Assembly (NCBI RefSeq): GCF_001194135.2
Contig: NC_068992.1
Location: 2,130,239-2,165,554 of the forward strand
Direction: 5' to 3'
From: Octopus bimaculoides
Lineage: Eukaryota
Length of the DNA: 35,316 nucleotides
A program made the translations under genes and the position numbers. Positions within the stretch are counted from its first letter, which is position 1. Every line of letters begins with the position of its first letter. The notes under the pieces were generated by a model. It was not told the DNA's origin. It saw nothing but the letters and a program-made list of their open reading frames with translations, and searched no databases. Shown here in pieces: positions 16,980 through 17,310 of the stretch.

Positions 16980-17310
16980 TATGGGTTAAGAAGGCAAGTG
17001 AAGAACACGGTATTTTTCAAAAAGTCACCTGAGGAGACGCATCTGCACCTGTAATGCATAGCAGTTCATTGAATAGAATCTCACATGTAACGTACGGGTG
17101 CATGATGGGTCGAAACAATCGTAGTGGCTTCGATAAGAAGTCCCATAAATTTTATTTTCCGTCTCTACAGAAACAAGTGAAATCTTGAAGCAAATCCAGT
17201 GTCATATACATCCATACTGTTGTTGAAGTCAGACTAGGTGAATACTATGAACGGGCTTTAAACAGCATAAACAAGGTGTATACTCGAGTATAAAATTAAT
17301 GCTATATATA
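16980..17310 (+). mobile_element. Putative Penelope-like pseudo-LTR / retrozyme-like unit
   Basis: Contains a minimal type I hammerhead plus the T-rich tract shared with 13770-87. No RT or GIY-YIG ORF is visible, and a gap lies immediately upstream. Confidence 0.45.
17022..17130 (+). ncRNA. Type I hammerhead ribozyme with intact core, minimal stem III and long stem II
   Basis: Stem I AAGTCAC (17022-28) / GTGGCTT (17124-30) forms 7 bp with one U.G. Core CTGAGGA 17029-35. Stem II GACGCATCTGCACC / GGTGCATGATGGGTC forms 13 Watson-Crick pairs, has G10.1-C11.1 and is extendable. GAAA 17112-15. Stem III is AC-AATC-GT. The predicted cleavage is GUA|G after 17123. Confidence 0.88.

What the first reader, a model, noticed from the sequence alone, without database searches (positions are those of the whole stretch)
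17022..17130. Intact type I hammerhead ribozyme with minimal near-palindromic stem III and unusually long stem II
Seen in sequence: every conserved core position is present (C3 U4 G5 A6 N7 G8 A9 = CTGAGGA, G10.1-C11.1, GAAA, A15.1-U16.1, H17 = A), along with a 7-bp stem I. The predicted cut is GUA|G between 17123 and 17124. Stem II is about 76 nt (17036-17111): 13 Watson-Crick pairs, extended by UGUA/UACG and UGCAU/AUGUA. Stem III plus loop, ACAATCGT (17115-22), is one base from a perfect palindrome; ACGATCGT to ACAATCGT would be a typical CpG-decay change. Established knowledge: minimal type I hammerheads with short palindromic stem III occur in Penelope-like retroelements and retrozymes and cleave as dimers. 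Inference: this is a Penelope/retrozyme-type ribozyme of an octopod genome. The long stem II is atypical for minimal hammerheads and might provide tertiary stabilisation or define a new variant.
Basis: partly seen in the sequence, partly recalled or inferred. Interest (0 to 1): 0.85.

Follow-up and report, generated by a model that had tools for sequence, protein, structure and literature searches.

The report
Lone hammerhead ribozyme motif, octopus-like genome
The sequence does contain a complete, non-random type I hammerhead self-cleaving RNA motif with an unusually long second helix, but it is one isolated copy below the Rfam threshold, most likely left by a ribozyme-carrying retroelement, which is an expected find in an animal genome.

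Summary
At 17022-17130 (+) every conserved hammerhead core position is present. Stem I has 7 bp, stem II is a 76-nt hairpin (-30.2 kcal/mol), and stem III is a 2-bp stem with a tetraloop. The predicted cut is at 17123|17124. Chance is an unlikely cause: I estimate about 5e-5 such motifs per window and about 4 per 2.7-Gb genome for the bare descriptor, falling to about 1e-3 once stem II stability is counted.

Rfam Hammerhead_1 aligns over the whole model but scores 23.7 bits, below its gathering score of 34. The alignment places 62 nt as an insertion in loop II.

I could not recover any homologous copy. The window holds no second copy, no tandem array and no reverse transcriptase or GIY-YIG reading frame within about 5 kb. 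The motif lies in a unit of about 320 nt between TA-rich tracts, next to a 5'-truncated, decayed LINE 3' end.

The most likely reading is a solitary, possibly decaying copy of a Penelope-like or retrozyme-type hammerhead. "Intact" holds for the core only: the broken helix III palindrome removes the predicted dimer helix (+0.3 against -10.0 kcal/mol). One copy cannot show that the long stem II defines a new variant. Interest is modest.

The parts
17022..17028 (+). Stem I, 5' strand (AAGUCAC)
   Evidence: Pairs with 17124-17130 over 7 bp including one U-G. Seen in the sequence, in the MFE fold and in the Rfam alignment.
17029..17035 (+). Catalytic core, C3 U4 G5 A6 N7 G8 A9 = CUGAGGA
   Evidence: Seen in the sequence. 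Aligned to the CUGAnGA of Hammerhead_1.
17036..17111 (+). Stem II, a 76-nt hairpin. It is closed by G10.1-C11.1 and has about 22 bp with a G.G mismatch and a bulged U, plus a small apical stem.
   Evidence: RNAfold gives -30.2 kcal/mol, z = -4.8, with 1 of 3000 shuffles as stable. Rfam treats 62 nt of it as an insertion in loop II.
17112..17115 (+). Catalytic core, G12 A13 A14, followed by A15.1
   Evidence: Seen in the sequence and in the Rfam alignment.
17115..17122 (+). Stem III and its loop, ACAAUCGU: pairs A15.1-U16.1 and C15.2-G16.2, loop AAUC
   Evidence: Seen in the sequence. It is one base from the palindrome ACGAUCGU. The self-duplex energy is +0.3 kcal/mol, against -10.0 for the palindrome.
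17123..17124 (+). Predicted cleavage site, H17 = A17123 | G1.1 = G17124
   Evidence: Position follows from the hammerhead consensus. Cleavage was not tested.
17124..17130 (+). Stem I, 3' strand (GUGGCUU)
17013..17021 (+). Possible extension of stem I, 5' side: UUUUU 17013-17 followed by the internal-loop strand CAAA 17018-21
   Evidence: In folds constrained to the hammerhead structure, on 330 and 490 nt, UUUUU pairs with AAGAA 17135-39 across a 4x4 internal loop. This is a prediction only.
17131..17139 (+). Possible extension of stem I, 3' side: internal-loop strand CGAU 17131-34 followed by AAGAA 17135-39
   Evidence: This is a prediction only.
16981..17302 (+). Unit of about 320 nt that carries the hammerhead; probably an insertion. 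Its ends are approximate.
   Evidence: It is bounded by a TA-rich tract at 16911-16975 and by (TA)7 at 17303-17316. It has no similarity to the rest of the window or to the LINE contig L012.
17329..17834 (+). Neighbouring feature, not part of the ribozyme: the decayed, 5'-truncated 3' end of a LINE ORF2 with three C-terminal C2H2 zinc fingers
   Evidence: Translated similarity of 42-44% to P0001 and P0002, E = 6e-17. On contig L012, P0001 follows a reading frame with an RVT_1 domain, 7e-28.

Best explanation
This is a real type I hammerhead ribozyme sequence, meaning it descends from a functional hammerhead and is not a chance motif. It lies in a non-coding unit of about 320 nt inserted in a (TA)n microsatellite. 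The unit is most likely a solitary fragment or monomer of a hammerhead-carrying retroelement: either the terminal repeat of a Penelope-like element or its non-autonomous derivative, a non-LTR retrozyme.

If the + strand is transcribed, three helices would form around the CUGAGGA / GAAA core. The RNA would then cut itself after A17123 by the usual internal transesterification, leaving a 2',3'-cyclic phosphate and a 5'-OH at G17124. In the parent element this reaction trims multimeric or read-through transcripts to unit length.

This copy has only a 2-bp helix III, has lost the palindrome needed for dimer pairing, and shows no recognisable loop I / loop II contact. I therefore expect it to cleave slowly, or only with high Mg2+ or protein help.

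Shown here: the motif, its non-randomness and its genomic setting. Inferred: the retroelement origin and the cleavage itself.
For: The motif is complete and the Hammerhead_1 alignment covers the whole model.

Stems I and II form in the MFE of the 126-nt RNA, with z = -3.56. Stem II alone has z = -4.8.

Chance expectation is about 5e-5 per window. It is about 1e-3 per genome once stem II stability is included.

Eleven chance matches to the same core bases lack both stems.

The unit is flanked by TA tracts, and a 5'-truncated LINE lies next to it in the same microsatellite.

From the literature:
- Penelope-like elements and Naiads insert preferentially in AT-rich or (TA)n DNA and carry hammerheads in their terminal repeats (PMC8557442, PMC11167929, PMC4209133).
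- Invertebrate retrozyme hammerheads have a 2-bp helix III with a tetraloop (PMC7229834).
- Octopus vulgaris has 30 recently active Penelope families (PMC13282606).
Against: No homologous copy was found anywhere, so there is no covariation and no copy number.

The Rfam score of 23.7 bits is below the gathering score of 34. Scaled to a 2.7-Gb genome, that score alone would be expected about 2-3 times by chance.

The window shows no reverse transcriptase or GIY-YIG frame within about 5 kb, no second hammerhead and no tandem repeat. N gaps at 16718-16910 and 17868-17951 could hide neighbours.

In longer transcripts a competing fold is 2.8-7.4 kcal/mol more stable than the hammerhead fold. In the 330-nt context it pairs 5' core and stem II-base residues with 17160-66.
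Confidence: 0.62

Rival explanations
1. Chance motif. A stable 76-nt genomic hairpin happens to be flanked by CUGANGA and GAAA and by short complementary flanks, with no ribozyme ancestry or activity.
For: Hammerhead-like consensus matches are expected by chance in large databases (PMC3088659). The bare descriptor is expected about 4 times per 2.7-Gb genome. The Rfam score is below the gathering score. No homologue was found.
Against: Given a hairpin, the flanks must still supply about 11 fixed bases plus 9 base pairs. Combined with the stability of stem II, the expectation is about 1e-3 per genome. Chance matches found in metagenomes have no stems. The only other 76-mers in the window that are as stable are microsatellites.
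Confidence: 0.15
2. Host-domesticated single-copy ribozyme, for example in an intron or UTR, conserved for RNA processing. This would resemble the amniote intronic HH9/HH10 or the Clec2 3'-UTR hammerheads.
For: It is a single copy in the window, its core is complete, and its GC content is higher than the surroundings (46% against about 37%).
Against: No gene context could be established. It sits inside a microsatellite and transposon patch next to a decayed LINE. The helix III palindrome is broken. No tertiary-contact motif is recognisable.
Confidence: 0.06
3. The hammerhead belongs to the neighbouring LINE, as a 5' leader retained in an internally deleted copy, and processes the LINE transcript.
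For: It is on the same strand and lies about 200 nt upstream of the LINE fragment.
Against: The LINE homology starts abruptly after (TA)7, inside ORF2, as in an ordinary 5' truncation. The related LINE contig L012 has no hammerhead and no similarity to the unit. A type I hammerhead at the 5' end would be cut off and not copied with the element (inference).
Confidence: 0.03

Closest known systems
Rfam RF00163 Hammerhead_1 (type I hammerheads of metazoan repeats: Schistosoma Sm-alpha, newt satellite 2, cricket and others)
   Same: Open stem I, identical core positions, G10.1-C11.1 and A15.1-U16.1, a short helix III, and a GUH cleavage triplet. The alignment covers the full model.
   Different: Helix II is 76 nt, against a 4-bp stem and 6-nt loop in the model consensus. 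The conserved loop I / loop II bases are absent. The score is 23.7 bits, below the gathering score of 34.
Hammerheads of Penelope-like elements (minimal hammerheads; Cervera and de la Pena 2014, PMC4209133)
   Same: Type I, a weak helix III with a near-palindromic sequence, a helix II longer than canonical, no loop-loop motif, and an AT-rich or microsatellite insertion context.
   Different: There is no adjacent RT/GIY-YIG frame and no second terminal repeat. [quoted passage not shown] Helix I is 7 bp, against the 4-5 bp described. Helix II is far longer than the 7-8 bp described. Helix III is present as 2 bp plus a loop, not reduced to nothing.
Metazoan non-LTR retrozymes (PMC7229834; bioRxiv 10.64898/2026.07.22.740005)
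   Same: A non-coding unit of a few hundred nucleotides with low GC, a type I hammerhead, and a helix III of 2 bp capped by a tetraloop as in invertebrates.
   Different: It is not in a tandem array here. Circular RNA was not tested. A family consensus is not available.
Naiad Penelope-like elements with 'HHR_half_core' (PMC8557442)
   Same: Insertion bias for (TA)n. The two halves of a hammerhead core lie far apart (35-50 nt reported), which would correspond to a long helix II. Naiad remnants are reported in Octopus.
   Different: Here the separation is 76 nt. No Naiad reading frame is nearby.

Membership tests
Hammerhead ribozyme, type I | Conserved core C3 U4 G5 A6 N7 G8 A9, G12 A13 A14, and H17 | tested here: met
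   CUGAGGA at 17029-35, GAA at 17112-14, A at 17123.
Hammerhead ribozyme, type I | Three helices around the core, with G10.1-C11.1 and A15.1-U16.1, and stem I open | tested here: met
   Stem I has 7 bp, stem II about 22 bp, stem III 2 bp.
Hammerhead ribozyme, type I | Score at or above the Rfam RF00163 gathering score | tested here: not met
   23.7 bits against 34. The alignment places 62 nt as an insertion in loop II.
Hammerhead ribozyme, type I | Covariation that supports the helices in homologues | not testable with these tools
   No homologue was retrievable and no eukaryotic genome collection was on hand.
Hammerhead ribozyme, type I | Site-specific self-cleavage that depends on the core | not testable with these tools
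   This needs a transcription and cleavage assay.
Penelope-like element hammerhead | Location in a terminal repeat flanking an RT plus GIY-YIG reading frame | tested here: not met
   A Pfam scan of all stop-free stretches of at least 40 aa in 12153-22100 found no RT or GIY-YIG domain. N gaps and decayed frames leave some room for a missed one.
Penelope-like element hammerhead | A second hammerhead nearby (tandem, or within 50 kb) that allows a dimeric ribozyme | tested here: not met
   The window holds only one hammerhead on either strand. The relaxed hit at 20378-20555 (-) is at chance level.
Penelope-like element hammerhead | Palindromic helix III / loop 3 that can pair in a dimer | tested here: inconclusive
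   The sequence is one base from a palindrome. The present self-duplex is +0.3 kcal/mol and the repaired one -10.0.
Penelope-like element hammerhead | An unpaired nucleotide between A9 and G10.1 | tested here: not met
   A17035 is followed directly by G17036, which pairs with C17111.
Non-LTR retrozyme | Tandem repeats of about 150-400 bp, each with a type I hammerhead | tested here: not met
   There is no tandem repeat at the locus and no second copy. A 193-N gap starts 112 nt upstream of the hammerhead.
Non-LTR retrozyme | Helix III of 1-2 bp capped by a small loop | tested here: met
   2 bp plus the AAUC loop, compared with PMC7229834.
Non-LTR retrozyme | Expression as small circular RNA | not testable with these tools
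   No transcriptome data were available.

The most novel reading that the evidence does not exclude
The long, imperfect helix II is a conserved trait of an undescribed cephalopod hammerhead family. One possibility is that it marks the 3' end of octopus Naiad-type Penelope-like elements, which are currently said to lack canonical hammerheads. In that case the G.G mismatch and bulged U of helix II would dock on the 4x4 internal loop of helix I and replace the classical loop-loop contact.
Probability: 0.1. Interest if true: 0.6.

Novelty: new member of a known kind. Interest (0 to 1): 0.3.

Why it matters
If other copies exist, this would document hammerhead ribozymes in cephalopod genomes. The papers I could search describe no family there. 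It would also test whether descriptor-based surveys miss hammerheads with very long helix II, as the "half-core" cases in Naiad elements suggest. As a single unverified copy, it adds one more instance to a class already known to be widespread in animal retroelements.

Tried and rejected
Searches for homologues all failed:
- Exact look-up of two reading frames from the locus in public assemblies found nothing.
- A protein-level search with the three stop-free frames that cross the ribozyme gave 0 hits.
- Pattern scans of metagenome and viral contigs gave 0 hits with the strict pattern.
- The relaxed pattern gave 11 hits, all chance matches without stems.
- An exhaustive HMMER search with the 58-aa minus-strand frame returned P0004 and P0005. 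Both are reading frames through perfect tandem repeats whose scores are inflated by repetition. Neither locus has a hammerhead, and neither shows meaningful blastn similarity to the unit beyond one chance 13-nt word (E 0.51).

Supplements of the Penelope-like element papers held no sequences.

The idea that the zinc-finger-like frame downstream was the start of an element served by the ribozyme was rejected. It is the C-terminal end of a LINE ORF2.

Other rejected leads:
- A SINE-type origin with a tRNA promoter: no tRNA-like sequence was found.
- miRNA-family hits across the window are microsatellite artefacts.
- A second relaxed hammerhead hit at 20378-20555 (-) is at chance level, z = -0.46.
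- The bacterial promoter and terminator scan is not informative for this eukaryotic sequence.

Full report
**The observation**

- AAGUCAC (17022-28) pairs with GUGGCUU (17124-30) to give a 7-bp stem I with one U-G pair.
- CUGAGGA (17029-35) supplies C3 to A9.
- G17036 and C17111 close stem II.
- GAAA (17112-15) supplies G12, A13, A14 and A15.1.
- ACAAUCGU (17115-22) forms a 2-bp stem III (A-U, C-G) with an AAUC loop.
- A17123 is H17, so the predicted cut is GUA|G between 17123 and 17124.

Stem II is 76 nt. It folds into 3+4+10+5 base pairs interrupted by a G.G mismatch and a bulged U, with a small apical stem.

**Is it more than chance?**

Several controls say yes.
- A descriptor of my own (core, G10.1-C11.1, stem II >= 3 bp, stem III >= 2 bp, stem I >= 5 bp) finds only this site on either strand of the window. 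It finds nothing in 300 Markov-shuffled windows.
- In 40 Mb of Markov sequence scanned on both strands, 122 sites had the core with minimal stems II and III, but none had more than 4 bp of stem I. Extrapolating the stem I distribution gives about 8e-10 per position for 7 bp. That is about 5e-5 per window and about 4 per 2.7-Gb genome.
- Stem II alone is -30.2 kcal/mol, z = -4.8, and only 1 of 3000 shuffles is as stable. Of the window's own 76-mers, 0.46% are as stable, and all of those are microsatellites. Multiplying this in gives roughly 1e-3 per genome.
- As an empirical control, 11 matches to the same 21 core and helix III bases in public metagenomes all lacked the stems: 0-4 bp of stem I and 1-3 contiguous bp of stem II.

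**Rfam**

At gathering thresholds nothing in the window is reported. With the E-value threshold on 390 nt, Hammerhead_1 (RF00163) matches 17023-17129 over the whole model (positions 1-45 of 45) at 23.7 bits and E = 0.0016. The alignment treats 62 nt as an insertion in loop II. The score is below the gathering score of 34. Scaled to a whole genome for this one family, it would be reached about 2-3 times by chance (my arithmetic). The covariance-model score alone therefore does not prove the case. The structure of the inserted segment, which the model does not score, adds the weight.

**Fold**

The 126-nt RNA forms stems I and II in its MFE structure (-38.9 kcal/mol, z = -3.56). Forcing the full hammerhead secondary structure costs 2.8 kcal/mol in 126 nt, 7.4 in 330 nt and 2.8 in 490 nt. 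In the 330-nt MFE a competing pairing joins 5' core and stem II-base residues to 17160-66. In the constrained folds stem I continues beyond a 4x4 internal loop (CAAA / CGAU) with UUUUU 17013-17 paired to AAGAA 17135-39.

No loop I / loop II motif of the canonical metazoan type is visible. Whether the helix I internal loop contacts the irregularities of helix II is speculation.

The helix III sequence as it stands has no predicted self-duplex stability (+0.3 kcal/mol). The palindrome one base away, ACGAUCGU, would give -10.0. If this ribozyme is of the kind that needs a dimer, this copy is impaired. "Intact" therefore applies to the core only. CpG observed/expected is 0.83 in the unit, like the surroundings at 0.70-0.84, so a CpG-decay origin of that base is possible but not indicated.

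**Surroundings**

The window is a draft eukaryotic assembly with 14 N gaps, about 35% GC and very many microsatellites. The hammerhead lies in the piece 16911-17867.
- Upstream there is a TA-rich tract (16911-16975) and then a 193-N gap.
- Downstream, after 172 nt, comes (TA)7 at 17303-17316.
- Directly after that, from about 17329 to at least 17834, the + strand encodes a decayed protein tail with stops, frameshifts and lost zinc ligands. This tail is 42-44% identical to P0001 and P0002 (E = 6e-17).
- P0001 lies on contig L012 directly after a reading frame with an RVT_1 domain (7e-28) and a YADD motif. The segment is therefore the 3' end of a LINE ORF2 with three C-terminal C2H2 fingers, truncated at its 5' side right at the TA tract.
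- After the next gap another (TA)18 follows.

The hammerhead unit shows no similarity to L012 or to any other part of the window. The picture is of a (TA)n microsatellite that has received separate insertions: a unit of about 320 nt carrying the hammerhead (16981-17302, ends approximate) and a 5'-truncated LINE.

No reverse transcriptase or GIY-YIG frame is detectable in the stop-free stretches of 12153-22100. There is no tandem repeat at the locus, no tRNA-like promoter region and no second hammerhead.

**Search for relatives**

None of the collections at hand holds animal genomes as DNA, so I used indirect routes. All failed. The details are listed under what was tried and rejected. As a result there is no covariation evidence, no copy number and no link to a coding element.

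**Interpretation**

Three findings from the literature bear on this.
- Type I hammerheads with a 1-2 bp helix III and a small palindromic loop are the standard form in metazoan repeats. They sit in the terminal repeats of Penelope-like elements and in their non-autonomous derivatives, the non-LTR retrozymes (PMC4209133, PMC7229834, bioRxiv 10.64898/2026.07.22.740005).
- These elements prefer AT-rich or (TA)n targets (PMC8557442, PMC11167929).
- Octopus vulgaris carries 30 recently active Penelope families (PMC13282606).

The most economical reading is therefore a solitary fragment or monomer of such an element. If transcribed it could cut after A17123 by the ordinary hammerhead chemistry, probably slowly or only with help. 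A Penelope-like hammerhead has been reported to be protein-assisted (PMC11167929).

Against filing it as a member:
- The Rfam gathering score is not met.
- No coding partner, second copy or tandem array is present.
- The unpaired base between positions 9 and 10.1 is absent.
- Helix I is longer, and helix II far longer, than described for minimal Penelope-like hammerheads.

Helix II stacks coaxially on helix III and away from the core (PMC4209133), so its length should not prevent catalysis. This is inference, not a test. One copy cannot show that the length is a family trait.

One lead is worth following. Naiad-type Penelope-like elements, which target (TA)n and have remnants in Octopus, were reported to lack canonical hammerheads but to have core halves 35-50 nt apart in some cases (PMC8557442). 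A long helix II would produce exactly that pattern.

**Verdict**

It is a new member of a known kind and of modest interest. The decisive work is a genome-wide search in octopod assemblies and a cleavage assay.

Noticed in passing
window 17329-17834 (+): The decayed, 5'-truncated 3' end of a LINE ORF2 whose C-terminal tail carries three C2H2 zinc fingers. Its closest relatives (42-44% identity) come from marine and other ENA metagenome assemblies, and one of them follows an RVT_1 reading frame.
   Followed up: yes
window 22547-23375 (-): A mariner/Mos1-type transposase pseudogene: HTH_48 domain at 1.6e-21, a partial DDE domain and an HDNARPH motif, split over three frames.
   Followed up: partly
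window 4327-4422, 10287-10382, 30249-30344, 31794-31889 (+): Four copies, 76-89% identical to the reference copy, of a SINE-like repeat (...GGCCATGCTGGAGCACCGCCTTTAGTCGAACAAATCGACCCCAGGACTTATTC...). I did not test this.
   Followed up: no
window 16911-16975, 17303-17316, 17952-17988: TA-rich tracts bracket both the hammerhead unit and the LINE fragment. This suggests repeated insertions into one (TA)n microsatellite.
   Followed up: partly
whole window, for example 12199-12318, 9693-9757, 20899-20969: Dozens of sub-threshold Rfam matches to miRNA families (mir-297, mir-3149, mir-1277, mir-466) all fall on TA/TG/CA microsatellites and are artefacts.
   Followed up: yes
L015 1908-3746; L016 10001-31472: The exhaustive protein search returned reading frames through perfect tandem repeats (units of about 64 and 80 aa) with strong E-values. 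The scores came only from summing weak matches over 9-11 identical repeats. This is a caution for searches of this kind.
   Followed up: yes
window 17054-17188 (+): A 44-codon reading frame starts at an ATG inside stem II. In an Anolis Penelope-like element the reading frame starts at stem II of its hammerhead (PMC11167929). Here the frame is short and has no relatives, so it is probably meaningless.
   Followed up: partly
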